64,000 nucleotides of DNA. It comes from Dendrobates tinctorius. Its lineage: Eukaryota. The DNA lies in contig NW_027361688.1 of NCBI RefSeq assembly GCF_039654945.1, positions 1,488,001-1,552,000 on the forward strand, given 5' to 3'. Below, in pieces: positions 66 through 64,000 of this stretch. The position numbers and the translations under genes were made by a program. Under the pieces are notes generated by a model. It was not told the origin of the DNA, ran no database searches, and saw only the letters and a list, made by a program, of their open reading frames with translations. Positions within the stretch are counted from its first letter, which is position 1. Every line of letters begins with the position of its first letter.

Positions 66-3000
66 TTAGTGAATGTGATAGGCCGCTCTGAACAGGTGTG
101 TTTTGAGGGAGCGCCTAAAACTATGCAAATTGTGGATAGTCCTGATTTCTTGGGGTAGAGCATTCCAGAGGATAGGAGCAGCACGGGAGAAGTCTTGGAG
201 TCGGGAGTGGGAGGTACGGATTAGTGCAGAGGTTAGTCGAAAGTCGTTTGCAGAGCGCAGCGATCGGCTAGGCCGATAGACAGAAATGAGAGAAGAGATG
301 TAAGGGGGTGCCGCACTGTGGAGAGCTTTGTGGGTGAGAACAAGTACTTTGAATTGGATCCTATAATGAATGGGCAGCCAATGTAAGGACTGGCGAAGAG
401 CGGACGTGTCCGAGTACCGATTACCCAGATGGACGATTCTGGCTGCTGCATTGAGTATGGACTGGAGAGGGGATAGTCGAGTGACGGGGAGGCCAATTAA
501 TAGAGCGTTGCAGTAATCCAGGCGAGAGTGGATCAATGCAACAGTGAGGGTTTTTGTTGTTTCCATAGTGAGAAAAGGGCGGATTCTAGAGATGTTCTTT
601 AGGTGTAAGCGGCAAGAGCGGGCAAGGGATTGTATATGGGATGTAAAGGAGAGATTGGTGTCAAACATAACACCCAGACAGCGCACCTGCTGCCGGGGTG
701 ATATTGTGGTACCACCCACGGAGAAGGAAATGTCAGATTTAGGGAGGTTAGTAGACGGCGGGAGCAGAAGTTCAGTTTTGGAGAGGTTGAGTTTCAGATA
801 GAGAGCGGACATGATATTGGAGACTGCGGACAGACAGTCACTGGCGTTCTGTAGTACAGCGGGGGTAAGGTCGGGGGAAGACGTGTATAGTTGTGTGTCA
901 TCAGCATAAAGATGGTACTGAAAGCCAAATCTGCTGATGGTCTGTCCAATTGGGGCCGTGTAGAGAGAGAAAAGAAGGGGGCCAAGGACTGAGCCCTGAG
1001 GTACCCCGACAGCAAGAGGAAGAGGAGATGACGTGGAGCCAGAGAACAAAACACTGAAGGAGCGGTCAGAGAGATAGGAAGAGAACCAGGAGAGTGCAGT
1101 GTCCTTAATGCCTAGTGACTGGAGCCTAGAGAGTAGGAGATGGTGGTCAACAGTATCGAAAGCTGCAGATAGGTCAAGAAGAATGAGCAGAGAGTGGTCA
1201 CCGTTACGTTTTGCTGTCAGAAGGTCATTGGTCACTTTGATGAGTGCAGTTTCAGTCGAATGTAGGGGGCGGAAGCCGGACTGTGAAGGGTCTAGAAGGG
1301 AGTGAATGGAGAGGTAACGGGTAAGGCGGGAGTAAACTAGGCGTTCCAAAAGTTTAGAGATGAAGGGGAGATTGGAGACTGGTCTGTAGTTGTTTTTGCA
1401 GGATGGGTCGAGAGCAGGTTTCTTTAGTAGTGGAGTAACGATGGCGTGTTTGAAGGAGGATGGGAAAATGCCCGAGGAGAGGGAGAGATTAAAGATTGTA
1501 GTTAGGTGGGTTGTGACGACTGGAGAGAGAGACTGGAGGAGATGTGAGGGAATGGGGTCGGTAGTGCATGTAGTCGGACGAGAAGAAGAGAGGAGTCTGG
1601 AGACTTCTTCTTCTGTTATGGGATCAAATGTGGAGAGTGAGCCAGGGGAGATGTAGGAAGGGATGGGAGTCACAGCACTTGGTGGTTGGGAGCAGATTTC
1701 TTGACGGATATTATCTATTTTTTCTGTAAAGTGGGAGGCCAGGTCATCAGCACAAATGTCTGTGATAGGGGCTTGTGCTTTTGGCCTGAGGAGGGAGTGA
1801 AAAGTGTCAAAAAGTTTCTTGGGGTTGTTGGCTTGTGAGGAGATCAGGGTGGTGAAGTAGGTCTGTTTGGCAAGGTGAAGGGCAGCGTTATAGGTTCTTA
1901 ACATAAATTTGAAGTGGATGAAGTCTTCTGGTGTGCGGGTTTTTCTCCATAGGCGTTCAGGACTCCTGGAGCATCGCTGGAGAAGTTGAGTTTGCGATGT
2001 GAGCCAGGGCTCTTTTACTCTGTGTTTGGAGGTTCGGAGGGTGAGGGGAGCTACTTGGTCAAGGGTGCTTCTAAGAGTGTCATTGTAGTGATGAACAGCC
2101 AGATTAGGACAGGAAAGAGAGGAGATTGGGGACAGAGATGAGTGTAGGGAATCTGAAAGTGTCTGAGGGTTAATAGCTTGTAGATTTCTGACTGTGTGGT
2201 AGGTAGGAATGAGCTGGGGTGGGCGAGGATTTGTGAGCGTGAAGGAGAGAATGTTGTGGTCAGAGAGTGGAAGCGGTGAGTTGTTTAGGTGGGAGATTGA
2301 ACAGAGCCGGCAGAAGACCAGATCAAGGGTGTTACCGTCCTTATGTGTCTCAGAGGTTGAAAGCTGTGAGAGGCCTAGAGAGGTGGTTAGTGATAGAAGC
2401 TGGGATGCAGATGTGGAATTAGGGCTGTTAATGGGGATGTTGAAGTCTCCCAGGATGAGGGTTGGTAGTTCTGAGGACATGAAGTGTGGCAGCCAGGCTG
2501 AAAAGTGGTCAAGGAAGAGGGTGGGTGAGCCTGGGGGCCGGTATATGACCGCTACCCTGAGGGAGAGGGGACGGAAGAGCCTGATGGTGTGGACCTCAAA
2601 AGAAGGGAATAAGAGTGATGGGACTGGGGGGATGACCTGGAAAGTGCATTGTGGGGACAGGAGTATGCCAACTCCACCACCAGGTCTGTTTGTGGGTCTC
2701 GGGGAGTGAGAGAATTGTAAGCCACCGTAGGAAATGGCAGCAGGAGAGACAGTGTCAGAATCCTGATTTCAGGTTTCAGTGAGGGCCAACAGATTAAGAG
2801 AGTTGTTCAGAAAGTAGTTGTGTAGGAAAGGAAGCTTGTTACAAGCAGACCGTGGATTCCAGAGGGCACAATTAAAAGATTGAGATGAGGGAGTGCAAGC
2901 AATGTTAATCAGATTATTGTGGTTTCGATATGAGGTAGGGTAGGGGTCGAGGTTGGGGGATGGTGGACCAGGGTTGGGGGAGATGTCCCCTGAAATCAGT

Positions 3001-3287
3001 AGGAGAAGGAAGATAAAGAGCCAATAGTTGTTGGAATTGTAAGTAGTTTTTTTCTGCGATGTGTTTGGGCAAGATGGGCTGAGGTTTCTCAGGAAGGTGA
3101 GGAGTGTGTGGGAGCTGTACATGGGAGAGGGAAGTATAGAGGGGCTGATGTGTATGAGTCGTGATGGAGGGGGGATAGGGTGATGAATGTGGATGGCAAG
3201 GGAACACAGGAGGATAAAAATAAAGCACATGGTTAAAGGGGAAGGCAAGGTGTGGGTTACCTGACTCCTTCCCTGACTTACTGCCAT
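66..3287 (-). pseudogene. L2 EN-RT ORF (~1073 codons) interrupted by one in-frame TGA at 2769-2771
   Basis: ORFs 66..2480 and 2769..3362 are in the same frame (2768-2480=288); motifs [53 protein letters not shown]; start MAVSQG matches MAVRQG of the intact copy. Confidence 0.88.
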
Positions 3288-3680
3288 GTATAAGTGCCGT
3301 TTTGCTGGATGCTTATCTTCTGTGATGCTTTGCTTATGGGATGCTTGCGTGCTGTACCCCACACTGCGTGCTTCCCCTTAGCAACTACTACATATATAGG
3401 CCACACTACAGGGTCAGGAGAGAGGGATTGTGGGAGATGGTTGGGTATAATTTGGCAGCTGGGGCCAGCACACCAGGGGATGGTTAGATGATCAAAGGCA
3501 CTAGACCAAGATGTGGCAAAATGCTATAGCACCTTCCACCTGATAAGATCTAGAAAGGCCCCAGTCACAGATCTAAAGCAGTAAGTATTACATACAGTGC
3601 AACAAATGAATTATACCAAAGCTTTAGCAAGCACATTTAAATATGCAGCAAAATGGTCAAGCAGCAGAAGTATGGAGTTG

Positions 3681-4032
3681 TACCATTTGGATATATTACA
3701 GCAGAGAAATAGAGGCAGCAGAGGTGGGAAGTTGTATCATTCAGGCTGCTTGCTGGCAGTGAATGGAGTAAATACATGCAGGGTGGCTCAGTTGATTACC
3801 ATTTGGATATATTACAGCAGAGAAATAGAGGCAGCAGAGGTGGGAAGTTGTATCATTCAGGCTGCTTGCTGGCAGTGAATGGAGTAAATACATGCAGGGT
3901 GGCTCAGTTGATTACCATTTGGATATATTACAGCAGAGAAATAGAGGCAGCAGAGGTGGGAAGTTGTATCATTCAGGCTGCTTGCTGGCAGTGAATGGAG
4001 TAAATACATGCAGGGTGGCTCAGTTGATTACC
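3681..4032. repeat. 116-bp tandem repeat, 3 near-identical units
   Basis: TACCATTTGG at 3681, 3797 and 3913, ending at TACC 4029. Confidence 0.95.
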
Positions 4033-4045
4033 TGTGTGAAGAGCA

Positions 4046-4650
4046 ATCCAAGAGAATTAGCATGGAGTAGTGACCGTTAGATTTAGCTGTTAGTAGATCA
4101 TTAGAGACTTTAGTGAGGGCAGTTTCAGTAGAGAGTAAAGAGCGGAAAACGGATTGGAACGGGTCGAGAAGAGAGTTATCAAAGAGATAGCGGATCAGAC
4201 AGGAGTAGACCAGGCGTTCCAGTAGTTTAGAGATGAAGGGAAGATTAGAGACAGGTCTATAGTTAGCGGCACAGTTTTGGTTGAGGGATGGTTTCTTAAG
4301 TAGTAGATGTATGATGGCATGCTTAAATGAGGAGGGAAAGATACCAGAAGAGAGAGAGAGAGGTTAAATATTTTAGTTAAGTGAGTGGTGACAGCAGGGG
4401 AAAGGGACTGGAGCAGATGTGATCGAAATGGGTCACTGGTGCAAGTGGTTGGGCGAGAAGATGCAAGGAGTCTGATCACTTCTTCTGTGACTGGTTCAAA
4501 ATCAGAGAGTGAGCTAGATGCAGTGGGGGAGGGAGGACAGTGCATGGTATGAGGTGATTGGGAGATAATTTCCTGTCGGATCTGGTCAATTTTTTTTTTT
4601 AAGTAATTGGCCAGATCGTCAGCTCAAAGCTCCATGGTTGGGGCCTGCAC
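4046..4650 (-). mobile_element. L2 internal fragment of the 60-63 kb subfamily
   Basis: High similarity to about 61263-61870 ([23 protein letters not shown]), with frameshifts. Confidence 0.9.
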
Positions 4651-5306
4651 TTTATATACTGCAAATGTCGGGAAGGGGTTAAAGCTTAATATGATTTGGT
4701 TGATCTTGTTTTTTAAATGTACAGGAAAGTCTTCTGCAGAAATGATGGAGGTTGGAGGGGCAATGGTGTAAGGAGGAGAGAATTAAGTGTTGAACAACTG
4801 TTCGGGGCTATGTGGTAGAGAAGATATGAGGGTTCTGACATCTTATTTAGCAGAGGTGAAGGCTGAAGTGAATGTGAACTCTGCCTGTGAGTGTGTTTTC
4901 ATACAGCACTCTGCACCGCTGGACACATGCCGTAGATTTTTGGTCAGGTTGATGTTTAAAGGTTGTCTATTGATTTGTCACACTCTTCCGTGCACAGGAT
5001 GGGAGATCGATAGCTGATGGAAGTGTGGCACTGTAGAAAACTATTTCTGTGCCTGTCATGGAGTGAAGATATGGAGGACAGCAGTAGTATAAAGTCAGAG
5101 TGTGTGAATGCTGATGTGTGTGAGGTTTCTGTGTGGGAGCCTGAAACAGGGTCGGGGTACACGTGTTAGGATTTCCTGTGGTCCGGAACGGAGTTCCGGT
5201 TGCCCCACAACCTCTGTTCTGAACAGATGTCTGGGTGGAGTTTGTGGTGTGGTGGAGTACATTCTTTACTCTTTCTTCTGGAGCCCTTGTTACCTCTCCT
5301 TCCAAG

Positions 5307-10082: not shown

Positions 10083-10100
10083 GGTGTCTATAGGACAGGG

Positions 10101-10580: not shown

Positions 10581-13040
10581 AGAAATTGGCTAGTGTATCA
10601 CAAACTACAAGGTGTATGTAGAATTGGGCAGAGTAGGAATCTCCCTAGAGTGCAGGTCTGTAAGAAAGGAACATGTCCTCGACTTATTCTCACAGAGTGA
10701 CACAGATAGCTTCACTGTGGCTGTGATAACAGCCGTTACACGGTACTGTGTGAGGAGCGTACACCGCTGTATGGTGTGAAAAAATGCACGCTCAGTACCT
10801 TAGCAGGACAAAAAAAAAAAATTGGGATTGCTTTTAAAAAAGCAGTTTGCAGAGCAGTGGGCAAACAGCAATGCAGCTGTCAGGAAGCCTTAGAAGGCAG
10901 CCCAACAACCAACACCACTGATACACCACAATATAGCCTCCCCTTGCACTGCACACACAGTGACTGGTGTGTTGTACAGGCACAATCGCTAGCAGCAGAA
11001 GCAGTTTTTTTTTCTTCTTCCCTGCCTAACACTCTCCCTACAGAATCAGCAGCAACCTCTCCCTATGCTAAGATCGGCAGAAGTAAGATGGCGGTCGGCG
11101 TGCACACCCTTTTATACCCCCTGTGACGCCCACCAAAGCAAGCCAATCACTTGCATGCCCTTCTGAAAGATGGTGGTGACCCGTGCCTATGTCATCATGT
11201 TGCACACAGTGTCCATGGATCCTGATTGGCTGAAAAAGAGCGCAAAACAAACTTTTGAAACGCGACTTTGGCGCGCAAGTCGCCGACCTCGTGGCCGACC
11301 TCATCCTAGGGTCGGGTTTTGTTTCAGGAAACCCGACTTTGCCAAAAGTCGGCGACTTTTGAAATTTTTCGACCCGTTTCGCTCAACTCTAGTGACGGAT
11401 ATTGACGTGCAAGACTCGTCCGAGTTTCTTGCAAATCTGACCCCGGCCTTAGACAAGGTTTCTTTTTAGTGATATTCCCTTGGTTTTGTGATCCATCAGC
11501 CCTTGTCCCTGTCCTGTCCTGACACCCACCATCTTCACCTCACTCTGCCACCCGGCTGACAACTTCCTTATCAGGGAGACAGAGATGTGACTCTCTGTAC
11601 CTCTTCTGGTCAAGACTGTCCCTGCGTCCAGACTTCCTCATTCTTCTAGGAAACTTACACTGAACTGTCCCATTCTCTTCGGATGCAGCTTAGCTGCACT
11701 AGAAACTGCTAACTCTGCTGTGTTTAGCCTTGCTCTCCACTGCACCCAGAACTTGACTCAGTCCTGGACTCTGACTATCCTGTGTCTGACTCACTGTAAC
11801 CAAGAAAACATTTTCTATAAAATCTTATCTAACCCCTCACAAACTGTGGGCTAATCCCAACTCTATTAACTATCTAATCCCTAGTGTAGTGCAAACTGTG
11901 CCCCTATCTACTGTATGATGTATGGTTCCCCTAGTGGACAGACCTCCCAGATTCCAAGGGACAGACTTAGGCATAGCCTATAGGAGAACCAAACACACAA
12001 CACTGGCCATAAGGATAAACTATAACATTACTGTATCACACATTAATGCATAGAATGAAACAACATCATCACAACCCCCTGATCCACGACGTCTTCTTCA
12101 TCCCAGCCTTCTCCCTACATGCGCTAGCTGCAGGACTTGGAGCAGGTGAAGAGGACAGGGATGAGAAAATTAGTAGAGAGTGGTCAGCAAGGGGTAGAGA
12201 TGAGGCTGTAAGGTTAGATAAGGAACAGAGGTGGGTGAAGATGAGGTCTACTGTATCTCCGTCTGTGTGGATTTATGTGGAGAATCATTGTGAAGGAAGT
12301 GATAGGAGTTTGGAGGCTGCAGATTGGTGGGTGTCAGTTGGTGTTTTGAAATCGCCTACGATGATGGTGGGAATGTCAGAAGAGAGAAAGTGGAGAAGTG
12401 ATCGAAAAAAACGGAGCCCACAGGTCGGTATATAATGGTGTCAGGCACACCTTGTGAAGTGTACCCGCTAAGCCCAAGGTGGGTACACGGGCCCACGGCA
12501 TTGGTGTAGCTAGCAGGATAGCATGTGGGAAACGAGGACGTGGCACACACAAGAGTCTTGGGAGCAGCTGGATGGAAGAAGTGAAGTATGCAGACATAAA
12601 AGCAGGTTCAGCACAGACGTGCACAACACTCGAGTCTTGAATAGCAATCCGAAGATACAGGTCTGTGTCATAATGGGCCTTTAAAGGCCTAAGGAGATTG
12701 TCATATGTCGGGGAACCTGTAAAGCCTGATGTGAAGGGAGGAGGACCCAGGTCTGGGACAGGTGTGTAACACACGTCCACTTGGAGAGTGGATACGGACA
12801 GAGTGGACTTCAGATGAATGGATGGTAGAGATAGGGTTGGGTTGAAGTTGTTAAAAAGAAGAAGGCCAACTCTCCCATCATCCATGTTTCTCTGGCCCAG
12901 GAAGAATAGATTGATAGAGGTAAAGAAGTCATGAATGGCATGGAGTTTGTCGCAGGTGGAATGGTGTTGAATAGTGCTTCAGAAAGATGGAGTGGGGGTC
13001 AACTGGGTGACTATTAAGCTGGAGAGGTTTGGTAGATTGA

Positions 13041-17687: not shown

Positions 17688-18791
<1,104 letters not shown>

Positions 18792-27668: not shown

Positions 27669-28494
27669 ATGGAGAGAATATAGCACTATATGGGGGTATG
27701 CAGCAGGATATGGAGGGTATATAGCACTATATAGGGGTATACAGCAGGATATAGAGGGTATGTTGCACTATATGGGGGTATGCAGCAGGATATGGAGGGT
27801 ATGTAGCACCATATGGGGGTATACAGCACAATATGGGGGTACACAGCAGGATATGGAGAGTATATAGCACTATATATGGGGTATACAGCAGGATATGGAG
27901 GTATATAGTACTATATGGGGGTATGCAGCAGGATATGGAGGGTATGTTGCACTATATGGGGGTATGCATCAGGATATGGAGGGTATGTAGCACCATATGG
28001 GGGTATACAGGATATGGAGGGTATGTAGCACTATATGGGGGGTATACAGCAGGATATGGAGGGTATATAGCACTATATGGGGGTATGCAGCAGGATATGG
28101 AGGGTATATAGCACTATATGGGGGAATACAGCAGGATATGGAGGGTATATAGCACTATATATGGGGTATGCAGCAGCATATGGAGGGTATGTAGCACTAT
28201 ATGGGGGTATACAGGATATGGAGGGTATGTAGCACTATATGGGGGGTATACAGCAGGATATGGAGGGTATATAGCACTATATGGGGGTATGCAGCAGGAT
28301 ATGGAGGGTATATAGCACTATATGGGGGAATACAGCAGGATATGGAGGGTATATAGCACTATATGGGAGGTATACAGCAGGAGCAGGATATGGAGGGTAT
28401 ATAGCTGTATATGGGGGTATGCAACAGGATATGGAGGGTATATAGCACTATATGGGGGTATACAGCAGGATATGGAGGGTATATAGCACTATAT
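27669..28494. repeat. ~41-bp minisatellite, left part
   Basis: Unit TATATAGCACTATATGGGGG + TATACAGCAGGATATGGAGGG. Confidence 0.97.
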
Positions 28495-30567
28495 AAAAAA
28501 TAAGATAATCCTTTAATTGCCCCACCATGGGGAAATCCAGAGCATTACAGCAGCAAGGCAGGAACAAGTACAGATACTGATGCATAAAGGCATTACATTG
28601 ACAGTAGGTAGGTACATACACGAAAAAAAAAGATATAACCGGACTATCACAACTGTGGATCTATTAGTTCACTGTTTGGGTCGTTCTCCGTTTTGGACAG
28701 TGCTAGTTATACAGCCTAACTGCAGCAGGAAGGAAGGACTTTCGATAGCGCTCCCGCTCACATTTAGGATGAAGTAGCCGGTCACGGACAGTACTGCACA
28801 TCTTTGTCACGGTCTCATGCATGGGATGGGAATCATTCTGCACCATGTAGCTCACTTTGGCCAGTATCCTCCTGTCGCCTACTTCCTGAACTGGATCAAG
28901 GGGGCATCCCAGGACAGAGCTGGCCCTTCTAATCAGTTTGTCCAGCCTTTTCCTGTCCCTGGTTGATATGCCACTACCCCAGCACGCCACACCAAAGATG
29001 ACTGATGCCACAACAGAGTTGAAGAAGGATGCAAGGAGTGCCCCCCTAACTCCGAAGGCTCTCAGCCTTCTGAGCAGATAAAGCCTACTGTGGCCCTTCC
29101 TGTACACTGCATCCAAGTGATGGGCCCAGTCAAGCTTATTATTGAGGATCACACCAAGGTACTTATAGGTGTCGACTATCTCAATGTCATTTCCCTGAAT
29201 GTTCACCACTACAGGTGGATTTTTTCCCTTGCGAAAGTCCACCACCAATTCTTTGGTCTTCCTGGAATTAATCCTAAGGTGGTTCCTCTGACACCACTCC
29301 ACAAAAGCTTGGTTAGTATCTCTGTACTGTCTTTCATCTCCTCCTGTGATGAGACCTACTATTGCAGAGTCATCAGAATACTTCTGCAAGTAGCAGCTAG
29401 ATGAGTTGCACTTAAAATTCACAGTGTACAGTGTGAAGAGAAAAGGGGCAAGAACTGTACCTTGAGGTGCCCCTGTATTGCAGATCACCGTGTCTGACAC
29501 ACTGTCCCGAACCTTTACAAACTGAGGTTGGCTCGTGAGGTAGTTAAGGATCCAGGTGGAGAGTTGGAGGTCCACGCCAACAAGGCCCAGCTTGTCTCTC
29601 AGTAGACCTGGCTGTATGGTATTAAAAGCACTAGAGAAATCGAAGAACATTATTCTCACAGTGCTCCCAGGTTTCTCCAGGTGAGAGTCCTATCTAGAAG
29701 GTGGATAATGGCATCATCCACACCAATGCCCGGCCTGTAGGCAAACTTGAGAGGGTCCATATCCGAGCTCACTAGAGGATGGAGACGTGTGAGAATCAAT
29801 CTCTCTAGTACCTTCATCAGGTGTGATGTCAATGCTACAGGTCTATAGTCATTAAGGTCTTTTGGATAAGGCTTCTTCGGAACAGGTACCACACACGATA
29901 ATTTCCACAGTTGTGGTACTATACCTATTCTCAGGCTCATATTGAACAGATATGTAATGATCTCACTTATCTGGTGCCCGCAGGTTTTGATTAGTCTTGC
30001 ACTGATGCAGTCAGGACCTGCAGCCTTCAAAACTTTGATCATATCCAGTTCTTTTGCAACCTGGGTACTTGTGAAGAACAGACCCTGGCTCAGTTGACAA
30101 GTTGCAGCAGGGGGTGAGGTTATTGTAGCAGAGAGGTGTGAACGGTATGCAAGGGCAGGAGCAGCCAGTGTGTGATTAAATCTGTTAAAGAATAGATTAA
30201 GTTCATTAAGCCTCTCTTTATCAACAACCATCCTGAAGACAGTCTGTCTATGCCCAGATATAGACTTTAGACCCTCCCAGAATTCATGAATCCTTTTCTG
30301 TGACAATTTCAGTTCAATCTTTCTCATAATTAGCCTTTCCCTGCCTGATTAGATTCTTCAGATCTTTCTGCACCTCTCTCAGTCTGCCCTTGTCACCTGA
30401 TCTGAAGGCCAACTTCTCTTTGAGAAGAGCCTTTATTCCGGGGCTGATCCATGGTTTATTGTTAGAGAAGCACCTCACTACTTTTGTGGGTACCGTGTTG
30501 TCTACACAGAAATTAATGTAGTCCATCATACAGTGTGTGCGACCATCCATGTCATCACCATAGGAAT
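28495..30567 (-). mobile_element. Rex1/Babar-clade LINE, 5' truncated and frameshifted, inserted in the minisatellite
   Basis: NNKPWIS, YRPVALTSHLMKVLER, RIMFFDFSSAFNTIQP, GAPQGTVLAPFLF, KYSDD across three ORFs; 3' hairpin and AT-rich tail near 28500-28545. Confidence 0.9.
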
Positions 30568-33357
30568 CTACAGCAGGATATGGAGGGTATAAAATACTAT
30601 ATTGGGGTATACAGCAGCATATGGAGGTATATAGCGCTATATGGGGGTATACAGCAGGATATGGAGGGTATGTAGCACTATATGGGGGTATGCAGCAGAA
30701 TATGGAAGGTATATAGCACTATAGGGGGGTATACAGCAGGATATGGAGGTTATATAGCAGTATATGGGGGTATGCAGAAGGATATGGAGGGTATATAGTA
30801 CTATATGGGGGTATGCAGAAGGATATGGAGGGTATATAGCACTATATGGGGTAAACAGCAGGATATGGAGGGTATGTAGCACTATATGGGGGTATACAGC
30901 TGGATATGGAGGGTATGTAGCGCTATATGGGGGTATACAGCAGGATATGGAGGGTATGTAGCACTATTTGAGGGAATACAGCAGGATATGGAGAGTATAT
31001 AGCACTATATGGGGGTATACAGCAGTATATGGAGAGTATATAGCACTATATGGGGTATACAGCAGGATATGGAGGGTATATAGCACTATATGGGTATACA
31101 GCAGGATATGGAGGGTATATAGCACTATATGGGGGTATACAGCAGGATATGGAGGGTATATAGCACTATATGGGTGTATACAGCAGGATATGGAGGGTAT
31201 ATAGCACTATATGGGTGTATACAGCAGGATATGGAGAGTATATGGCACTATATGGGGGTATACAGCAGGATATGGAGGGTATATAGCAGGATATGGAGAG
31301 TATATAGCACTACATGGGGTATACAGCAGTATATGGAGAGTATATAGCACTATATGGGGGTATACAGCAGGATATGGAGGGTATGTAGCACTATTTGAGG
31401 GAATACAGCAGGATATGGAGAGTATATAGCACTATATGGGGGTATACAGCACTATATGGGGTATACAGCAGGATATGGAGAGTATATAGCACTATATGGG
31501 TTATACAGCAGGATATGGAGGGTATATAGCACTATATGGGGTTAGACAGTAGGATATGGAGGGTATATAGCACTATATGGGGGTATACAGCAGGATATGG
31601 AGAGTATATAGCACTATATGGGGGTATACAGCAGTATATGGAGGGTATATAGCACTATATGGGGTATACAGCATGATATGGAGGGTATATAGCACTATAT
31701 GGGGTATACAGCAGGATATGGAGGGTATATAGCACTATATGGGGTATACAGCAGGATATGGAGAGTATATAGCACTATATGGGTATACAGCAGGATATGG
31801 AGGGTATATAGCACTATATGGGGGTATACAGCAGGATATGGAGAGTATATAGCACTATATGGGGGTATACAGCAGGATATGGAGGGTATATAGAACTATA
31901 CGGGGGTATACAGCAGGATATGGAGAGTATATAGCACTATATGGGGTATACAGCAAGATATGGAGAGTATATAGCACTATATGGGGGTATACAGCAGGAT
32001 ATGGAGGGTATATAGCACTATATGGGGGTATGCAGCAGGATATGGAGGTATACAGCAGGATATGGAGAGTATATAGCGCTATATGGGGGTATACAGCAGT
32101 ATATGGAGAGTATATAGCACTATATGAGGGTATACAGCAGGATATGGAGGGTATATAGCACTATATGGGGGTATGCAGCAGGATATGGAGGTATACAGCG
32201 CTATATGGGGGTATACAGCAGGATATGGAGAGTATATAGCGCTATATGGGGGTATACAGCAGGATATGGAGAGTATATAGCGCTATATGGGGTATACAGC
32301 AGTATATGGAGAGTATATAGCACTATATGGGGGTATACAGCAGGATATGGAGGGTATATAGCACTATATGGAGGTATACAGCAGTATATGGAGAGTATAT
32401 AGCACTATATGGGGTATACAGCAGTATATGGAGAGTATATAGCACTATATGGGGTTAGACAGTAGGATATGGAGGGTATATAGCACTATATGGGGGTATG
32501 CAGCAGGATATAGAGGGTATATAGCACTATATGGGGGGATACAGCAGGATATGGAGAGTATATAGCACTATATGGGGTATACAGCAGGATATGGAGAGTA
32601 TATAGCACTATATGGGGGTATACAGCAGGATATGGAGGGTATATAGCACTATATCGGGGTATGCAGCAGGATATGGAGGGTACATAGCACTATATGGGGG
32701 TATGCAGCAGGATATGGAGGTATACAGCGCTATATGGGGGTATACAGCAGGATATGGAGGTTATATAGCGCTATATGGGGTATACAGCAGGATATGGAGA
32801 GTATATAGCACTACATGGGGTATACAGCAGGATATGGAGAGTATATAGCACTATATGGGGTATACAGCAGTATATGGAGAGTATATAGCACTATATGGGG
32901 TTAGACAGTAGGATATGGAGGGTATATAGCACTATATGGGGGTATGCAGCAGGATATAGAGGGTATATAGCACTATATGGGGGTATACAGCAGGATATGG
33001 AGGGTATATAGTACTATATGGGGTATACAGCAGGATATGGAGGGTATATAGCGCTATATGTGGTATACAGCAGGATATGGAGAGTATATAGCACTATATG
33101 GGGTATACAGCAGGATATGGAGGTATATAGCACTATATGGGGGTATACAGCAGGATATGGAGGGTATATAGCACTATATGGGGGTATACAGCAGGATATG
33201 GAGGGTATATAGTACTATATGGGGTATACAGCAGGATATGGAGGGTATATAGCGCTATATGTGGTATACAGCAGGATATGGAGAGTATATAGCACTATAT
33301 GGGGTATACAGCAGGATATGGAGGTATATAGCACTATATGGGGGTATACAGCAGAAT
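30568..33357. repeat. ~41-bp minisatellite, right part
   Basis: Same dimeric unit over about 2.8 kb. Confidence 0.97.
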
Positions 33358-33399
33358 ATAACCCTTTGCTCCCCTGACCAGTGATGATCTCGGTGATTT

Positions 33400-33900: not shown

Positions 33901-33945
33901 AGTGTATAAGGCGTGATATCCTGTATCCAGCACTATGGATGGAGG

Positions 33946-35932
33946 GTGACACTATATGGCGATATACAGCACCACATGGGGGGATGACGCTATATGGCGA
34001 TATACAGCACCACATGGGGGGGTGACGCTATATGGCGACATACAGCACCACATGGAGGTGACACTATATGGCGATATACAGCATCACATGGAGGTGACAC
34101 TATATGGCGACATACAGCACCACATGGAGGTGACACTATATGGCGATATACAGCACCACATGGGGGGGTGACACTATATGGCGATATACAGCACCACATG
34201 GAGGTGACACTATATGGCGATATACAGCACCACATGGGGGTGTGACACTATATGGCGATATACAGCACCACATGGGGGGATGACGCTATATGGCGATATA
34301 CAGCACCACATGGAGGTGACACTATATGGCGATATACAGCACCACATGGGGGGATGACGCTATATGGCGATATACAGCACCACATGGGGGGGTGACGCTA
34401 TATGGCGACATACAGCACCACATGGAGGTGACACTATATGGCGATATACAGCACCACATGGGGGGTTACACTATATGGCGATATACAGTACCACATGGGG
34501 GTGACACTATATGGCGATATACAGCACTACATGGGAGGGTGACACTATATGGCGATATACAGCACCACATGGGGGTGACACTATATGGCGATATACAGCA
34601 CCACATGGGGGGGTGACACTATATGGCGATATACAGCACCACATGGGGGGGTGACACTATATGGCGATATACAGCACCACATGGGAGGGTGACGCTATAT
34701 GGAGATATACAGCACCACATGGGGGTGACACTATATGGCGATATACAGCACCACATGGGAGGGTGACGCTATATGGAGATATACAGCACCACATGGGGGT
34801 GACACTATATGGCGATATACAGCACCACATCGGGGGGTGACACTATATGGCGACATACAGCACCACATGGGGGGGTGACACTATATGGAGATATACAGCA
34901 CCACATGGGGGTGACACTATATGGAGATATACCGCACCACATGGGGGGTGACGCTATATGGCGATATACAGCACCACATGGGGGTGACACTATATGGCGA
35001 TATACAGCACCACATGGGGGTGACACTATATGGCGATATACAGCACCACATGGGGTGGTGACGCTATATGGAGATATACAGCACCACATGGGGGGGTGAC
35101 GCTATATGGCGATATACAGCACATGGGGTGGTGACGCTATATGGAGATATACAGCACCACATGGGGGGTGACACTATATGGAGATATACAGCACCACATG
35201 GGGGTGACATTATATGGCGACATACAGCACCACATGGGGGTGACACTATATGGCGATATACAGCACCACATGGGGGGGTGACACTATATGGCGATATACA
35301 GCACCACATGGGGGGGTGACACTATATGGCGATATACAGCACCACATGGTGAGTGACACTATATGGCGATATACAGCACCACATGGGGGGTGACACTATA
35401 TGGCGATATACAGCACCACATGGGGGGGTGACACTATATGGCGATATACAGCACCACATGGGGGTGACACTATATGGCGATATACAGCACCACATGGAGG
35501 TGACACTATATGGCGATATACAGCACCACATGGGGGTGACACTATATGGAGATATACAGCACCACATGGGGGGTGACACTATATGGAGATATACAGCACC
35601 ACATGGGGGGTGACACTATATGGCGATATACCGCACCACATGGGGGGTGACACTATATGGCGATATACAGCACCACATGGGGGGTGACACTATATGGCGA
35701 TATACCGCACCACATGGGGGGTGACACTATATGGCGATATACCGCACCACATGGGGGGTGACACTATATGGAGATATACAGCACCACATGGGGGGTGACA
35801 CTATATGGAGATATACAGCACCACATGGGGGGTGACACTATATGGCGATATACCGCACCACATGGGGGGTGACACTATATGGCGATATACAGCACCACAT
35901 GGGGGGTGACACTATATGGCGATATACAGCAT
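33946..35932. repeat. ~37-39-bp minisatellite
   Basis: Unit GTGACACTATATGGCGATATACAGCACCACATGGGG(G)n. Confidence 0.97.
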
Positions 35933-40172: not shown

Positions 40173-41276
<1,104 letters not shown>

Positions 41277-51309: not shown

Positions 51310-54004
51310 CATAGAATCATAGAATCATAGAATGGTAGAGTTGGAAGGGACCTCCTGGGCCATCTGGTCCAACCCCCTGCTCAAAGCAGGATTCGCTAAA
51401 TCATCCAAGTTAGATGTCTGTCCAGCCTCTGTTTGAAGACTTCCATTGAAGGAGAACTCACCACTTCTCGTGGCAGCCTGTTCCACTCATTGATCACTCT
51501 AACTGTCAAAAAGTTTTTTCTAATATCTAATCTGTGTCTCCTCCCATTCAGCTTCATCCCATTGCTTCTAGTCTTTCCTTGTGCAAATGAGAATAAAGTT
51601 GATCCTTCTACAATGTGACAGCCCTTTAGATATTTGTAGACAGCTATTAAGTCTCCTCTCAGTCTTCTCTTTTGCAAACTAAACATTCCCAAATCCTGCA
51701 ACCTTTCCTCATAAGACAGGGTTTGCAGACCGGTCACCATTCTGGTCGCTCTTTTCTGAACTTGCTCCAGTTTGTTGATGTCTTTTTTAAAATGTGGTGC
51801 CCAAAATTGGACACAATATTCCAGATGAGGTCTGACCAAAGAGGAGTAGAGGGAAATAATTACTTCACGTGATCTAGACTGTATGCTTCTGTTAATACAT
51901 CCTAGAATTGCATTTGCCTTTTTTGCTGCTGCATCACACTGTTGACTCATATTCAGTCTGTGATCTATTAGTATACCCAAGTCTTTTTCACATGTGCTGT
52001 CACTTAGCCCTATTCCTCCCATTCTATATATGCTTTTTTCATTTTTATTGCCCAGATGTAGTACTTTGCATTTCTCCCTGTTAAAAACCATTCTGCTAGT
52101 TGCTGCCCACTTCTCCAGTTTATTTAAATCTTTATGAATCCTCTCTCTCTCTTCTCTAGTATTAGCTATCCCTCCTAGCTTTGTGTCATCAGCAAATTTA
52201 ATCAGTTTACCCTCAATTCCTTCATCTAAATCGTTGATAAAGATGTTGAACAATACAGGGCCCAGGACAGAGCCCTGTGGTACCCCACTTGAGACATTCT
52301 TCCAACTGGATGTGCAGCCATTTACGACCACTCTTTGGGTCCGATCACTAAGCCAGTTATGAATCCACCTAACAGTTGTCTTGTCCATTCCATACTTAGT
52401 CATTTTTTCAATAAGGATTGTATGAGAGACTTTGTCAAATGCTTTGCTGAAGTCAAGATATACTATATCTACAGCATTTCCTTGATCCACCCAATCAGTA
52501 ATACCATCATAGAAGGAAATTAAATTAGTCTGACATGACTTATTAGTTACAAACCCATGCTGACTCTGTTTAATCACTTCATTCTTATCCAGGTATTGAC
52601 ATACATGTTGTTTAATAATTTGTTCAAAGATCTTTCCTGGTATAGAAGTCAGACTCACCGGCCTATAGTTGCCTGGGTCCACCTTCTTCCCCTTTTTGAA
52701 GATAGGAACAACATTTGCTCTTCTCCAGTCTTCTGGCACTTCTCCTGTTCTCCAAGAATTTTCAAAGATTATGGAGAGGGGTTCAAAAATTTCTTCTGCT
52801 ATCTCCTTCAGTACTCTGGGGTGTAATTCATCTGGACCTGGAGACTTGAATTCATTTAGGTTAGCTAAGTGTTTCCTCACTATCTTTCTGTTTATAGATA
52901 TCCTGGATTCTTCTATTCCCTTAATAGGACAGTGAATAACAGTTGATGTTACATTTCCTTTCTGAGAGAAAACAGATGCAAAATAGGAATTTAAAAGTTC
53001 AGCCTTCTCAACATCCTGTCTTACCATTTCATCATTTTCATCCTGTAAAAATCCTATAGCATCTTTGACTTTTCTTTTACTTTTGACATATCCCCAAAAT
53101 CCTTTATTATTGCTTTTGACATCTCTTGCAAGCCTCAATTCATTTTCAGCTTTAGATAATCTGATTTGTGCCCTGCAGGTTCTGCAGACAGCATTATATT
53201 CTTCTTTAGATATGCCTCCCTCTTTCCATTTTATAAACATTTTTTTCTTCCTTTTTAGCATGTGCTTAAGTTCTGTGTTCATCCATCCTGGTTTCCTTAA
53301 ATGCTTCCTATTCTTCCCTCTTTTTGGAATTGTTAACAATTGTGCTTTGAGAATTTCATTTTTCAAGATTTCCCATCCTTCCTGGACATTTTTGTCTTTA
53401 AGGATATCCAGCCATTGGATCCCTCCAATTCTCTTTCTGAATCCCTTAAAATCTGCCTTTCTGAAATCTAACCTTGACGTCTGAGTCTTCACAGGTCTTC
53501 CGCCTCTAGTTATCCAAAATTCTAAAATAGCATGGTCGCTACCTCCTAGGGTCCCAGCCACTTTTACCTCCTCAACCATTTTCTCCCTGTTTATAAGGAT
53601 TAGATCCAAGGTAGCAGTTCCCCTTGTTTTCTCCCCTACCTTTTGGAAGATAAAGTTGTCAGCAAGAGAAGATAAGAATTTCCTTGACCTGTTAGTTTTG
53701 CCTGAGAGAGATTCCCAACAAATGTATGGATAGTTGAAATCTCCCATGACAACTATGTCATATTTTTTGGAGAACTTGGCCATTTGATGCATAAAGAGTT
53801 CATCCATATCTTCAGCTTGCACAGGCGGCCTGTAGTAAATGCCTACAATGGTGTCCTTTCCATTGTTCTGTCCTTGTATTCTTACCCAAACAGTTTCCAC
53901 AGAACTCCCAGTCTCTGAAGCTTCAATCTCTGTGCAGATATACGCATTTCTAACATACAATGCGACACCCCCTCCTCGTTTATCAAGTCTGTTTCTTGCA
54001 AAAC
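51310..54004 (-). mobile_element. CR1 LINE, 5' truncated within the endonuclease
   Basis: (ATTCTATG)-type 3' repeats at 51310-51333; empty site near 45812; open ORF2. Confidence 0.94.
51396..53960 (-). CDS. CR1 ORF2 (partial EN plus RT), uninterrupted
   Basis: [52 protein letters not shown]. Confidence 0.88.
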   Translation of the reverse strand: MYVRNAYICTEIEASETGSSVETVWVRIQGQNNGKDTIVGIYYRPPVQAEDMDELFMHQMAKFSKKYDIVVMGDFNYPYICWESLSGKTNRSRKFLSSLADNFIFQKVGEKTRGTATLDLILINREKMVEEVKVAGTLGGSDHAILEFWITRGGRPVKTQTSRLDFRKADFKGFRKRIGGIQWLDILKDKNVQEGWEILKNEILKAQLLTIPKRGKNRKHLRKPGWMNTELKHMLKRKKKMFIKWKEGGISKEEYNAVCRTCRAQIRLSKAENELRLARDVKSNNKGFWGYVKSKRKVKDAIGFLQDENDEMVRQDVEKAELLNSYFASVFSQKGNVTSTVIHCPIKGIEESRISINRKIVRKHLANLNEFKSPGPDELHPRVLKEIAEEIFEPLSIIFENSWRTGEVPEDWRRANVVPIFKKGKKVDPGNYRPVSLTSIPGKIFEQIIKQHVCQYLDKNEVIKQSQHGFVTNKSCQTNLISFYDGITDWVDQGNAVDIVYLDFSKAFDKVSHTILIEKMTKYGMDKTTVRWIHNWLSDRTQRVVVNGCTSSWKNVSSGVPQGSVLGPVLFNIFINDLDEGIEGKLIKFADDTKLGGIANTREERERIHKDLNKLEKWAATSRMVFNREKCKVLHLGNKNEKSIYRMGGIGLSDSTCEKDLGILIDHRLNMSQQCDAAAKKANAILGCINRSIQSRSREVIISLYSSLVRPHLEYCVQFWAPHFKKDINKLEQVQKRATRMVTGLQTLSYEERLQDLGMFSLQKRRLRGDLIAVYKYLKGCHIVEGSTLFSFAQGKTRSNGMKLNGRRHRLDIRKNFLTVRVINEWNRLPREVVSSPSMEVFKQRLDRHLTWMI

Positions 54005-59714: not shown

Positions 59715-60143
59715 CAAAATTAAGGAAAAATTGAGTAACTATCAACCACAAGACAAAAATAGAGAAAGAATAGGAACAAGTAATAATAATAATAATAATA
59801 ATAAATTTTATTTTTATAGCGCCGACATATTCCGCAGCACTTTACATTTCAGAGGGGATTTGTACAGACAATAGACATTACAGCATAACAATAATCACAT
59901 ACAGTAGATTATAACACATACCAAGAGGAAAGAGGGCCCTGCTCGCAAGCTTACAGTCTATGAGGAAAGAGGGAGACACGAAAGGTGGGTGGTAACAGTT
60001 ACCCTGAATTGTATGGACCAGTCATAATGTTAAGTGTGTAACAGTACAGACACAGAGGGCTAATGGAGGCATAAAGCATGTGGGAACATGATGCGGGGAA
60101 CCTGGTTATGGTAAAACTTTTGGCTCTGCCACACAGGGATAGA

Positions 60144-63100
60144 TTAGGTTAATGTGTTGGGGTGGTAGGCCAGTCTGAATAAATGCGTTTTCAGGACACG
60201 CTTAAAATTGTGGGGATTGGGGACTAATCGTATTGACCTGGGAAGTGCATTCCAAAGAATTGGTGCGGCACGTGTAAAGTCTTGGAGACGGGAGTGGGAG
60301 GTTCTGACTATTGAGGATGCTAATCTCAGGTCATCAGCAGAACGGAGGGTGCGGGTAGGGTGGTATACTGAAACAAGGGAGGAGATGTAGGGTGGTGCTG
60401 AGCCATGGAGGGCTTTGTGAGTGAGGGTAATAAGTTTATACTGAATTCTGGAGTGGATGGGTAGCCAGTGTAATGACTGGCACAAGGTAGAGGCATCAGT
60501 GTAACGATTGGTGAGGAATATGATCCTGGCTGCAGCATTCAAGACAGATTGGAGGAGGGAGAGTTTGGTAAGAGGGAGACCGATTAGAAGAGAGTTACAA
60601 TAGTCAAGACGAGAATGAATAAGAGAAACAGTAAGAGTTTTTGCAGAGTCAAAGGTAAGAAAAGGTCGAATTCTAGAAATGTTTTTGAGGTGCAGATGAC
60701 AAGAGCGAGCCAGTGATCGAATGTGGGGGGCAAAGGAAAGCTCGGAATCAAGTATGACCCCAAGACAGCGGGCCTGTTGCTGGGGAGTAATAGTGGAACC
60801 ACACACAGAAATGGCAATGTCGGGTATAGGTACATTAGTAGCGGGAGGAAACACCAGGAGTTCAGTCTTTGACAGGTTCAGTTTCAGATATAGTGAGGAC
60901 ATGATATTAGACACAGCGTTTAGACAATCGCCGGTGTTTTCTAGAAAGGCTGGCGTGATGTCAGGAGAAGAAGCGTATAATTGGGTGTCATCAGCATAGA
61001 GATGGTACTGGAAACCAAATCTACTGATTGTTTGACCAATAGGGGCAGTGTACAAGGAGAAGAGGAGGGGACCTAGAACCGATCCTTGGGGGACCCCAAC
61101 AGTAAGGGGAAAATGAGAGGAGGAGGAACCGGCAAAAGATACAGTAAAGGAGCGGTCGGAGAGATAGGAGGAGAACCAGGAGAGAACGGTATCCTTGAGG
61201 CCACTGGAACGGAGCATAGTGAGGAGGAGCTGATGATCCACAGTGTCGAATGCTGCAGAGAGATCCAAGAGAATTAGCATGGAGTAATGACCATTTGATT
61301 TAGCTGTTAGCAGATCATTAGAGACTTTAGTGAGGGCAGTTTCAGTGGAGTGTAAAGAGCGGAAACCGGATTGGAGAGGGTCGAGAAGAGAGTTTTCTGA
61401 GAGATAGCGGATAAGACGGGAGTGGACCAGGCGTTCCAGGAGTTTAGAGATGAAGGGAAGATTAGAGACAGGTCTATAGTTAGCGGCACAGTTTTGGTCG
61501 AGGGATGGTTTTTTAAGTAGTGGATGTATGATGGCATGCTTAAATGAGAAGGGAAAAATACCAGAAGAGAGAGAGAGGTTAAATATTTTAGTTAGGTGAG
61601 GGGTGACAGCAGGGGAAAGGGACTGAAGGAGCTGTGACGGAAATGGGTCACTGGTGCAAGTAGTTGGGCGAGAAGATGCAAGGAGCCTGCTTACTTCTTC
61701 TTCTGTGACTGGTTCAAAATCAGAGAGTGAGTTAGATGCAGTGGGGGAGGGAGGACGGTGCATTGTATGAGGTGATTGGGAGATAATTTCCTGTCGGATC
61801 TGGTCGATTTTTTCTTTGAAGTAATTGGCCAGATCGTCAGCTCGGAGCTCCGTGGTTAGGGCCTGTACTCTTGGATTGAGTAGAGAATGAAAAGTGTCAA
61901 AGAGACGTTTCGGGTTATTGGACAGTGAGGTGATGAGGGTGTTGAAATAGGATTGTTTGGAGAGGTGAAGGGCAGTGTTGTATGTTCTAAGCATAAACTT
62001 AAAATGGATGAAATCTTCGTGTAGATTGGATTTTCTCCACAGACGTTCGGCGCACCTGGAGCACCGCTGCAGGAAACGTGTTTGCACCGTGTGCCAGGGT
62101 TGTCGCCGTCTGCGTTGTGGTGTTCTATTTATAGGGGGTGCAAATTCATCCAGGGCACTTTGAAGTGTTTCATTGTAATGCTTCAATGCAGAATCAGGAC
62201 AGGAGAGGGAGGAGATAGGGGCCAATGAAGACTGCAAGTTCTTCATAAGTTTCTGGGTGTTAATGGCCTGTATGTTTCTATAAGTCTGGACAGTGGGGGT
62301 GACCTGAGCAGCCTGGCAGTTCTTGAAAGAGAATGAAAGAAGATTGTGGTCAGAGAGCGGGAGAGGGGAGTTTGCAAAATCATCCACTGCACAAAGCCGA
62401 GAGAAGACCAAATCGAGGGAGTTTCCGTCTTCATGCGTTGGAGAATTAGTAAGCAGCGAAAGGCCAAATGAGGAGGTTAGAGATAAAAGGTGAGTAGCAG
62501 ATGGGGAGAGGGGAAGAGCAATGGGGATGTTGAAATCACCCATGATGAGGGTAGGGATGTCACAGGAGAGAAAATGTGGAAGCCAAGTGGCAAAATGATC
62601 CAGGAACTGATGGGAGGGGCCGGGAGGACGATACACCACCGCCACTCGCATGGAGAAGGGGGTGTAGAGTCTGACGGCATGGACCTCAAAAGAAGGGAAG
62701 ACAAGTGAGGGTACTTGAGGGATAACCTGAAAGGTACATTTTGGTGATAGGAGCAGACCAACGCCTCCACCAGCTCTATTGTCTGATCTTGGGGTATGAG
62801 AGAAGTGAAGCCCCCCGTATGAAAGAGCAGCAGCAGCAGCGGTAGTGTCTGACTGCTGGATCCAGGTTTCAGTAAGAGCCAGGAGGTTAAGAGAATTAGA
62901 AAGGAAGAAGTCATGAATGAAGGAGAGTTTGTTACACACTGAGCGAGAATTCCAAAGTGCACAATTAAGAGAGACAGATGGCATGCAGGGAATATTAATA
63001 AGATTAGAGGGGTTTCTGAGTGTAGCAGTCGGGAGGTTTGACTTTCTATAACATGGGGGACCAGGGTTGGGAGCAATGTCTCCTGCGACTAGGAAAAGGA

Positions 63101-63413
63101 GGATAGAAAGAGTGAGCAGATGGTTAAGTGATTTGTGAGAGCGTCTCTGATGTTGAATGGTGGGACTGACTGGATCTGTGCAGTTTAACAACGTGAAAAG
63201 AGCATGAGTGCTATACATAGGAGAGGAAAGAAGCGAGGGGCCAATGTGAATGGAGTGTAGAGAGTTAATGCCAGGGCGGTTGATGTGTGTGAATGCAGCG
63301 GCCAGGATTAAAATTACACAAATGCATATGGTATATATTTGTTGTCCTCCAAATGTACAGGGAGTAGATGTATATAAATGTCTTACCTGTCTCCAGCCCT
63401 GTCTCACTGCCAT
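60144..63413 (-). CDS. L2 protein: hydrophobic leader, 2A-like motif, APE endonuclease, reverse transcriptase
   Basis: [56 protein letters not shown]. Confidence 0.93.
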
Positions 63414-63716
63414 GTTATAACTGCCAGTACTTTGATAAATTGTACTTGGATAAAGTGTGCATAAATGCCCCCTGCATAAATGCTATCCCCAAGCTATGTC
63501 TGAATATATAGGAGGATAAGACTTAGAACTTTTTTTTTTTTTTGGGCTCTCTCTTCTCGTTAATCAATCACACTAAATTGAGACACCAGGACCCAATAAA
63601 ATGTTGTGGTCAAATAAACACATGTCCAGCACTACATGGATCATAAAGCACTTTGAAAAGTTTCTTGACCTCACAACATAAGGGGACAAGCAGAGTAAGT
63701 TGAAAAAAAACTATAT

Positions 63717-64000
63717 ACCATATAGAAGCTTGCAGAGTTGAAAACACAGAGATAGCATTCAGGATTAACTGCTTGCTGACATTGAATGGAGACACAGGAG
63801 TGGATTCAGAGCAGAGATTGGAAAAGCTGGTTACCATATAGAAGCTTGCAGAGTTGAAAACACAGAGATAGCATTCAGGATTAACTGCTTGCTGACATTG
63901 AATGGAGACACAGGAGTGGATTCAGAGCAGAGATTGGAAAAGCTGGTTACCATATAGAAGCTTGCAGAGTTGAAAACACAGAGATAGCATTCAGGATTAA
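63717..64000. repeat. 116-bp tandem repeat (at least 2.4 units)
   Basis: ACCATATAGAAG at 63717, 63833 and 63949. Confidence 0.95.

What the first reader, a model, noticed from the sequence alone, without database searches (positions are those of the whole stretch)
63717..64000. Two divergent L2 lineages both carry 116-bp tandem monomers at their 5' ends
Seen: the arrays at 3681-4032 and 63717-64000 both have a period of exactly 116 bp. They lie about 400 and 300 bp upstream of the L2 start codons and share CATTCAGG followed by CTGCTTGCTG.CA.TGAATGGAG, although the rest of the monomer is diverged. There is no room for an ORF1 between array and EN-RT ORF. Known: mouse L1 uses 5' tandem monomers as a promoter. 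Inference: a single-ORF L2 group with a monomer-type promoter under length constraint. I do not know whether this has been described.
Basis: partly seen in the sequence, partly recalled or inferred. Interest (0 to 1): 0.72.

Follow-up and report, generated by a model that had tools for sequence, protein, structure and literature searches.

The report
Tandem 5' monomers on frog L2
Two young copies of an L2-type jumping gene in a poison-frog genome each begin with a perfect head-to-tail array of a 116-base unit, laid out like the repeated promoter units of mouse L1; the arrays are real and belong to the elements, but promoter activity is untested.

Summary
TRF finds two perfect 116-bp arrays, at 3681-4032 (3.0 copies) and 63716-64000 (at least 2.5 copies, cut by the window end). 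Each lies 393 or 303 nt 5' of the ATG of a minus-strand single-ORF EN/RT LINE. Element B (60144-63413) is intact. Element A (75-3287) has a single nonsense codon.

A and B are 66-74% identical in ORF nucleotides, and their spacers ("tethers") no longer align. The monomers still share a 23-nt core (21/23) and a second block, in the same order and with the same period.

No other monomer occurs in the 64 kb. Array A abuts an interrupted older L2 RT fragment at 4037-4651. It is therefore the 5'-terminal part of element A, and no ORF1 lies beyond it.

The layout of monomers, tether and ORF matches mouse and rat L1. Unlike L1, the monomers contain no CpG.

Four more distant L2-like loci and three metagenome relatives have no such array. 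I found no description of L2 5' monomers in the searchable literature.

An unchecked scan note (s1-366948) reports another L2 5' array elsewhere in this genome.

Verdict: a new variant of a known kind, of moderate interest.

The parts
63716..64000 (-). Element B monomer array: at least 2.45 units of 116 bp, all identical, cut by the window end
   Evidence: TRF; nhmmer profile hits; no CpG
63414..63715 (-). Element B tether (about 300 nt, non-repeated). It starts like a degenerate monomer and holds a degenerate copy of the core at about 63569-63591, an A14 run (63530-63543), a TATA-like CCTATATAT (63504-63512) and a 20-codon uORF that ends 2 nt before the ATG
60144..63413 (-). Element B ORF: 1089 aa, intact, made of a leader, a 2A-like GDIAPNPGP motif (63057-63083), an APE endonuclease and an RT
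59782..60143 (-). Element B 3' UTR, ending in an (ATT)7 tail at 59782-59802
3681..4036 (-). Element A monomer array: 3.03 identical units of 116 bp; this is the 5' terminus of element A
   Evidence: TRF; junction alignment; nhmmer
3288..3680 (-). Element A tether (393 nt). Its first 47 nt resemble the 3' half of the monomer. It holds a TATA-like CCTATATAT at 3392-3400
75..3287 (-). Element A ORF: 1071 codons in one frame with a single in-frame TGA at 2769-2771; 2A-like GDISPNPGP at 2964-2990; RT domain
4037..4651 (-). Fragment C: a 615-bp piece of a B-lineage L2 RT, 91.7% identical in DNA to B 61254-61869. It is 5'-truncated and stops abruptly at array A

Best explanation
The 116-bp arrays are an inherited, transcribed, 5'-terminal part of a frog (dendrobatid) group of single-ORF L2-like LINEs. 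The layout is monomer array, then a 300-390-nt tether that begins as a decayed monomer, then the leader-2A-EN-RT ORF. This is the same layout as the mouse and rat L1 5' UTR.

Shown:
- The arrays exist.
- They are collinear with the ORF, and homologous between two lineages.
- In element A the array sits at the element's 5' boundary.

Inferred:
- The monomers act as a modular internal RNA polymerase II promoter or enhancer. Their conserved 23-nt core (CTCCATTCAnTGnCAGCAAGCAG, with inverted CATTCA / TGAATG arms) would be the factor-binding part. Transcription would start in or at the head of the array, so that the promoter is copied into each new insertion.
- Monomers are gained and lost quickly, by reverse-transcriptase template jumping or by unequal exchange. 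That would explain why they are identical within an element and diverged between lineages.
For: - Two perfect arrays with the same period.
- Both are 5' of homologous ORFs with a conserved ATG context.
- The core and a second block (ATGGTAAyCArCT) are shared in the same order; the core is found only in the arrays, with 0 matches in shuffles.
- The core is 21/23 identical, while the ORFs are 66-74% identical in nucleotides and the tethers do not align above chance. The core is therefore the best-conserved non-coding piece.
- In both lineages the array gives way to the tether directly after ATGGTA, and each tether begins like a decayed monomer (p about 0.04-0.05 each).
- Array A abuts an interrupted RT fragment of another L2, so the array is the 5' end of element A.
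- A has one nonsense codon and B is intact, so both insertions are young.
- No other monomers occur in the 64 kb.
- Monomers plus tether is the established mouse and rat L1 architecture, in which the monomers carry the transcription signals (PMC5381506).
Against: - There is no expression, transcription-start or reporter data.
- Only two full-length copies were seen, and only one 5' boundary. Array B is cut by the window end.
- The monomers have no CpG (o/e 0, against 0.5 in the ORFs), unlike every mammalian L1 promoter.
- Each monomer carries 3 upstream ATGs in sense orientation, which is awkward for a translated 5' UTR.
- A conserved TATA-like box sits downstream in the tether, so the array could be an enhancer rather than the start site.
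- No factor motif was identified.
- The perfect identity of the units is equally expected from neutral, recent duplication.
Confidence: 0.55

Rival explanations
1. Neutral by-product. The arrays are part of the element, but they are only 5'-terminal duplications. They would arise when the L2 reverse transcriptase reaches the RNA 5' end and jumps back to a short internal homology, or by unequal exchange. The real promoter would lie elsewhere, for example in the tether.
For: The units are 100% identical within each element. Array A starts and ends in the same phase, at GGTA. The monomers have no CpG and no recognisable promoter motif. There is a conserved TATA-like box in the tether.
Against: The 23-nt core is kept at 21/23 while the rest of the 5' region diverged beyond alignment. 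The period of 116 is kept despite +12/-12 changes in block spacing. A promoter located downstream of the transcribed array start would still need start-site control from inside the element.
Confidence: 0.22
2. RNA-level role. The monomers would act in the transcript, as splice units (an intron plus a 10-nt micro-exon, as another scan note reads a similar array), as a structured 5' UTR element, or as a translation control.
For: The B monomer has a pyrimidine tract followed by AAG, then 10 nt, then GTAACC. The core has inverted arms, CATTCA and TGAATG. Removing the many uATGs by splicing would make sense.
Against: The A monomer has no AG at the matching place, so the splice-like pattern is not conserved. 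Monomer RNA folds no better than shuffles, with z from 0.0 to 0.9 on both strands. There are no Rfam matches. Spliced RNAs would not pass the array on to new copies.
Confidence: 0.1
3. The arrays do not belong to L2. They would be a separate satellite or non-autonomous repeat next to which L2 copies happen to lie. For B, this repeat would be a poly(A)-tailed element ending at the A14 run.
For: An A14 run at 63530-63543 lies between array B and the B ATG. The 5' boundary of B is outside the window.
Against: Two independent insertions carry homologous arrays in the same orientation, with a similar distance and the same phase of the array-to-tether junction. The array sequences have diverged in step with their ORFs. 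Array A is wedged between an interrupted RT fragment and element A. There are no solo monomers in the 64 kb.
Confidence: 0.05

Closest known systems
Mouse and rat L1 5' UTR (A, Tf and Gf monomers plus tether)
   Same: There is a head-to-tail array of monomers at the 5' end, in sense orientation. A non-repeated tether of a few hundred nt, which looks like decayed monomer, precedes the first ORF. The 5' UTR evolves fast relative to the ORF (PMC5381506).
   Different: The LINE clade is different (L2-like, single ORF, no ORF1). The monomer is 116 bp rather than about 200 bp (mouse) or about 650 bp (rat), and its sequence is unrelated. There are no CpGs, whereas L1 monomers form a CpG island. The units are perfectly identical. 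Promoter activity is not shown here.
Tandemly duplicated 5' UTR motifs in other mammalian L1s (horse, elephant, hyrax, opossum)
   Same: Motifs of 70-100 bp are duplicated two or three times in the 5' UTR (PMC5381506).
   Different: These are mammalian L1s and CpG-rich. That paper reports no tandem duplication for lizard L1 5' UTRs and mentions none for the short frog and fish L1 5' UTRs; it does not treat L2.
Single-ORF L2, CR1 and Ingi-clade LINEs with an N-terminal 2A-like peptide (Odon et al. 2013, PMC3708506)
   Same: There is one ORF with a leader, a 2A-like motif ending in NPGP, then the endonuclease and RT. L2-clade examples from Xenopus tropicalis are listed there.
   Different: That work does not describe 5' monomer arrays. 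Here the motif has Ala or Ser where the canonical Glu stands, and some non-conservative changes at that position (including Ser in two tested elements) were inactive in that study.
Dictyostelium TRE5-A (DRE) A-module repeats (from my own knowledge, not checked here)
   Same: It is a non-LTR element whose 5' promoter module can occur in tandem copies.
   Different: The clade, host and sequence are unrelated.

Membership tests
L2-clade non-LTR retrotransposon | APE-type endonuclease and reverse transcriptase in one polyprotein | tested here: met
   Pfam Exo_endo_phos and RVT_1 in B. The RT matches L1 ORF2p and R2 structures.
L2-clade non-LTR retrotransposon | The RT groups with the L2 clade in a phylogeny with named references | not tested
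   No labelled reference set was on hand. The evidence is indirect only. B is 22% identical to the CR1-like element at 51396-53960 in the same window. It is 38-41% identical to fish-like elements, one of which (L002/L003, P0016) carries a (TAAATG)n repeat about 200 nt 3' of its ORF. PMC3708506 lists frog L2-clade elements that carry 2A.
L2-clade non-LTR retrotransposon | 3' end is a short-unit microsatellite tail rather than poly(A) | tested here: met
   (ATT)7 at 59782-59802, about 340 nt after the B stop codon.
Monomer-type LINE 5' UTR (mouse/rat L1 type) | Two or more head-to-tail monomers at the 5' end, in sense orientation | tested here: met
   3.0 and at least 2.5 units of 116 bp, collinear with the ORFs.
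Monomer-type LINE 5' UTR (mouse/rat L1 type) | The array is internal to the element and is carried to new insertions | tested here: met
   Two independent insertions of two lineages carry homologous arrays. Array A directly abuts an interrupted foreign RT fragment. Only one 5' boundary was seen, and no target-site duplication could be checked.
Monomer-type LINE 5' UTR (mouse/rat L1 type) | A non-repeated tether lies between the array and the first ORF | tested here: met
   393 nt in A and 303 nt in B. Each starts like a decayed monomer.
Monomer-type LINE 5' UTR (mouse/rat L1 type) | Monomers have promoter activity and contain transcription start sites | not testable with these tools
There are no reporter data.
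Monomer-type LINE 5' UTR (mouse/rat L1 type) | CpG-rich monomers (a CpG island) | tested here: not met
   0 CpG in both arrays. CpG o/e is 0.10-0.15 in the tethers against about 0.5 in the ORFs and the whole window.
Monomer-type LINE 5' UTR (mouse/rat L1 type) | Monomer number varies among copies | tested here: inconclusive
   3.0 units in A and at least 2.5 in B, which is cut off. An unchecked scan note (s1-366948) mentions a 1571-nt L2 5' array elsewhere in the genome.

The most novel reading that the evidence does not exclude
An L2-clade LINE has evolved, independently of rodent L1, a modular internal promoter built from CpG-free 116-bp monomers. Unit length would be constrained (116 bp is about 11 helical turns, so repeated sites would face the same side of the DNA). 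Copy number would be rebuilt at each generation by reverse-transcriptase template jumping. This would give a methylation-blind promoter design for a vertebrate retrotransposon.
Probability: 0.2. Interest if true: 0.6.

Novelty: new variant of a known kind. Interest (0 to 1): 0.42.

Why it matters
Promoters of vertebrate L2 and CR1-type LINEs are hardly known, because almost all copies are 5'-truncated. Here there are young, full-length L2 copies with a clear modular 5' end and a short conserved core. That gives a concrete, testable candidate for the L2 promoter. It would also be a second, independent case of the monomer solution known from rodent L1. The complete lack of CpG would be an instructive contrast with L1, whose monomers are controlled by DNA methylation. 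In practice, these arrays will be annotated as minisatellites unless they are linked to the element.

Tried and rejected
- The look-up of encoding contigs for the closest frog proteins (Phyllobates, Ranitomeya, Dendrobates) returned no DNA because the assemblies are too large.
- Exact look-ups of two ORFs inside the arrays found nothing.
- A 200-aa N-terminal protein search gave only one short ENA contig, with 101 nt of upstream sequence.
- Core-pattern scans of metagenome, viral and prokaryotic genome contigs gave 0 hits, as expected for frog DNA.
- Ungapped alignment of the two monomers in any phase is no better than chance (45/116 against a null of 43.5). The homology is block-wise, not full-length.
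- The tethers of A and B do not align above chance.
- RNA structure is rejected as the main explanation: fold z-scores are about 0 and there are no Rfam hits.
- The intron plus micro-exon reading fits the B monomer but not the A monomer.
- The bacterial-type promoter scan is irrelevant to a eukaryote and is not used.
- Six literature searches found L1 monomers and 2A-LINE papers but nothing on L2 5' monomers. The library cannot match the string 5'UTR well, so absence there is weak evidence.

Full report
**Observation.** Tandem Repeats Finder reports two arrays with a period of exactly 116 bp and 100% matching copies. One is at 3681-4032 (3.0 copies). The other is at 63716-64000 (2.5 copies) and is cut by the window end (sequences).

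**What the arrays sit next to.** Both arrays lie on the 5' side of minus-strand LINE ORFs.
- Element B (60144-63413) is an intact 1089-aa ORF with Pfam endonuclease and RT domains. It has a 3' UTR ending in (ATT)7 at 59782-59802.
- Element A (75-3287) reads in one frame over 1071 codons and is 67% identical to B. It has one in-frame TGA at 2769-2771, where B has TGG.
- Both elements are therefore young. They belong to two lineages, with ORF nucleotide identity of 66-74%.
- Both ORFs start with the conserved context ACATGGCAGT.AG.CAGGG. After a leader of about 100-110 aa, both carry a 2A-like motif: GDIAPNPGP in B and GDISPNPGP in A.
- The best protein hits are dendrobatid frogs: 97% to Dendrobates tinctorius, 88-91% to Ranitomeya and 79% to Phyllobates. 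One earlier scan note calls the genome cane toad. The protein hits favour a poison frog.

**Are the monomers homologous, and do they belong to the elements?** In sense orientation the two monomers share a 23-nt core, CTCCATTCAnTGnCAGCAAGCAG, at 21/23. They also share a second block, ATGGTAAyCArCT, in the same order.
- The core pattern occurs five times in the window, only inside the arrays, with none in 100 shuffles.
- A profile built from both monomers finds no other copy in the 64 kb.
- The rest of the monomer does not align. The best ungapped phase gives 45/116, the same as chance.
- The distance between the two conserved blocks is 34 nt in A and 46 nt in B, and the other segment compensates, so both periods are 116. 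This is suggestive of a length constraint, but it rests on two lineages.
- The tethers (393 and 303 nt) do not align above chance. The core is thus far better conserved than its surroundings, and better than the coding sequence.
- In both lineages the array gives way to the tether directly after ATGGTA. Each tether begins like a decayed monomer, and B has a degenerate core copy about 125 nt into the tether (p about 0.04-0.05 each, so weak).

**The 5' boundary.** On the sense strand, the sequence upstream of array A is a 615-bp fragment of another L2 RT (fragment C, 4037-4651).
- C is 91.7% identical in DNA to B 61254-61869.
- Its homology stops within a few bases of the first monomer, with a little microhomology at the junction.
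- Either element A inserted into C, or the reverse transcriptase switched from the 5' end of the A RNA to another L2 RNA. In both cases the array is the 5'-terminal part of element A, and no ORF1 lies beyond it.
- The test that would separate the two cases needs sequence to the left of window position 1.
- The 5' boundary of B lies outside the window.
- Between array and ATG, and within the arrays, the longest ATG ORFs are 50 and 75 codons. There is no room for an ORF1.

**Properties relevant to function.**
- Both arrays contain no CpG at all. The tethers have CpG o/e of 0.10-0.15, while the ORFs and the whole window are near 0.5.
- Each monomer has three sense ATGs.
- Monomer RNA folds no better than shuffled sequence on either strand, and Rfam has no match.
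- The core has inverted arms, CATTCA and TGAATG, with a 16-nt spacer in A and a 21-nt spacer in B. This could be a dimeric binding site or a small hairpin. With two sequences, covariation cannot be assessed.
- The B monomer shows a pyrimidine tract followed by AAG, then 10 nt, then GTAACC. That is the 'intron plus micro-exon' look described by scan note s1-366948 for another L2 5' array. The A monomer has no AG at that place, so the pattern is not conserved between lineages.

**Relatives.** Four loci of three L2-like families at 38-40% protein identity, from three other assemblies, show no long-period array within 2.5-3 kb upstream of the ORF (L002, L003, L010, L011). Neither do three distant metagenome loci. 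The arrays are therefore not a general L2 feature. No closer frog DNA could be fetched.

**Comparison with what is known.**
- In mouse and rat L1, the 5' UTR is an array of monomers that carry the transcription signals, joined to ORF1 by a tether of about 250 bp.
- Several other mammalian L1s have 70-100-bp motifs duplicated two or three times. All of these are CpG-rich.
- That paper reports no tandem duplication for lizard L1 5' UTRs and mentions none for the short frog and fish ones (PMC5381506).
- Single-ORF L2, CR1 and Ingi-clade elements with an N-terminal 2A-like peptide are published, including L2-clade examples from Xenopus tropicalis (PMC3708506).
- I found no paper describing tandem 5' monomers in L2. 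The search library is incomplete, and Repbase notes are not covered.

**Explanation.**
- Most likely (about 0.85), the arrays are a heritable, transcribed 5' part of these L2 lineages.
- By analogy with L1, and because the core is conserved, I take them to be modular promoter or enhancer units with rapid gain and loss of units (about 0.5-0.6 given the first point).
- The main rival is that they are neutral 5'-terminal duplications made by template jumping, with the real promoter in the tether. A TATA-like CCTATATAT is conserved there, 99-113 nt before the ATG.
- An RNA-level role, or a separate repeat unrelated to L2, is less likely.

**Limits.**
- Clade assignment to L2 rests on indirect evidence, not on a labelled RT phylogeny.
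- Perfect unit identity in a long-read assembly cannot be checked against reads here.
- No N-runs were touched (17835-17962 and 41002-41129 lie outside the finding).
- Nothing encountered looked human.

Noticed in passing
window 63057-63083 (B) and 2964-2990 (A), minus strand: A 2A/StopGo-like motif sits at the end of a hydrophobic leader of about 100-110 aa: GDIAPNPGP in B and GDISPNPGP in A. Ala or Ser stands in place of the canonical Glu. The kind is published (PMC3708506), and some non-conservative changes at that position (including Ser in two tested elements) were inactive there. Other scan notes have already flagged it.
   Followed up: partly
window 63381-63389 (B) and the matching place in A, about 3255-3263, minus strand: A consensus-like 5' splice site, CAG|GTAAGA in B and CAG|GTAACC in A, lies 24 nt after the ATG in both lineages. 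It may only reflect the conserved codons Gln-Val.
   Followed up: no
window 63415-63477, minus strand: A 20-codon uORF with two in-frame ATGs, at -64 and -49. It ends at a TAA 2 nt before the main ATG of element B. Element A has only one uATG in its last 300 nt, at -106.
   Followed up: no
window 63504-63512 and 3392-3400, minus strand: A TATA-like CCTATATAT is conserved in both tethers, 99 and 113 nt upstream of the ATG. It is followed in both by a duplicated GGGG.AGCA-type motif.
   Followed up: partly
window 63530-63543: An A14 run (sense strand) inside the B tether, with no counterpart in A. It could mark an old retroposed insert in the B-lineage 5' UTR. This is unexplained.
   Followed up: no
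window 10080-10580: A 130-bp x 3.9 tandem array (95% matches) lies directly 5' of a minus-strand hAT transposon with a BED finger and a hAT dimerisation domain (ORFs 6518-10082). These are probably subterminal repeats of the transposon.
   Followed up: no
window 51396-53960, minus strand: A CR1-like LINE ORF (EN plus RT, 854 aa), only 22% identical to the L2 elements. TRF shows no 5' tandem array next to it.
   Followed up: partly
window 12180-12410 and 29090-30126, minus strand: Further decayed LINE remnants: an L2-like EN piece at 44% identity and an RT piece at 28% identity.
   Followed up: no
window 27669-28494, 30569-33360, 33939-35931: Large minisatellites with 41-bp and 38-bp units that share TATATGG(G)GG-type motifs. 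Together they cover about 5.6 kb next to the histone-gene region noted by other readers.
   Followed up: no
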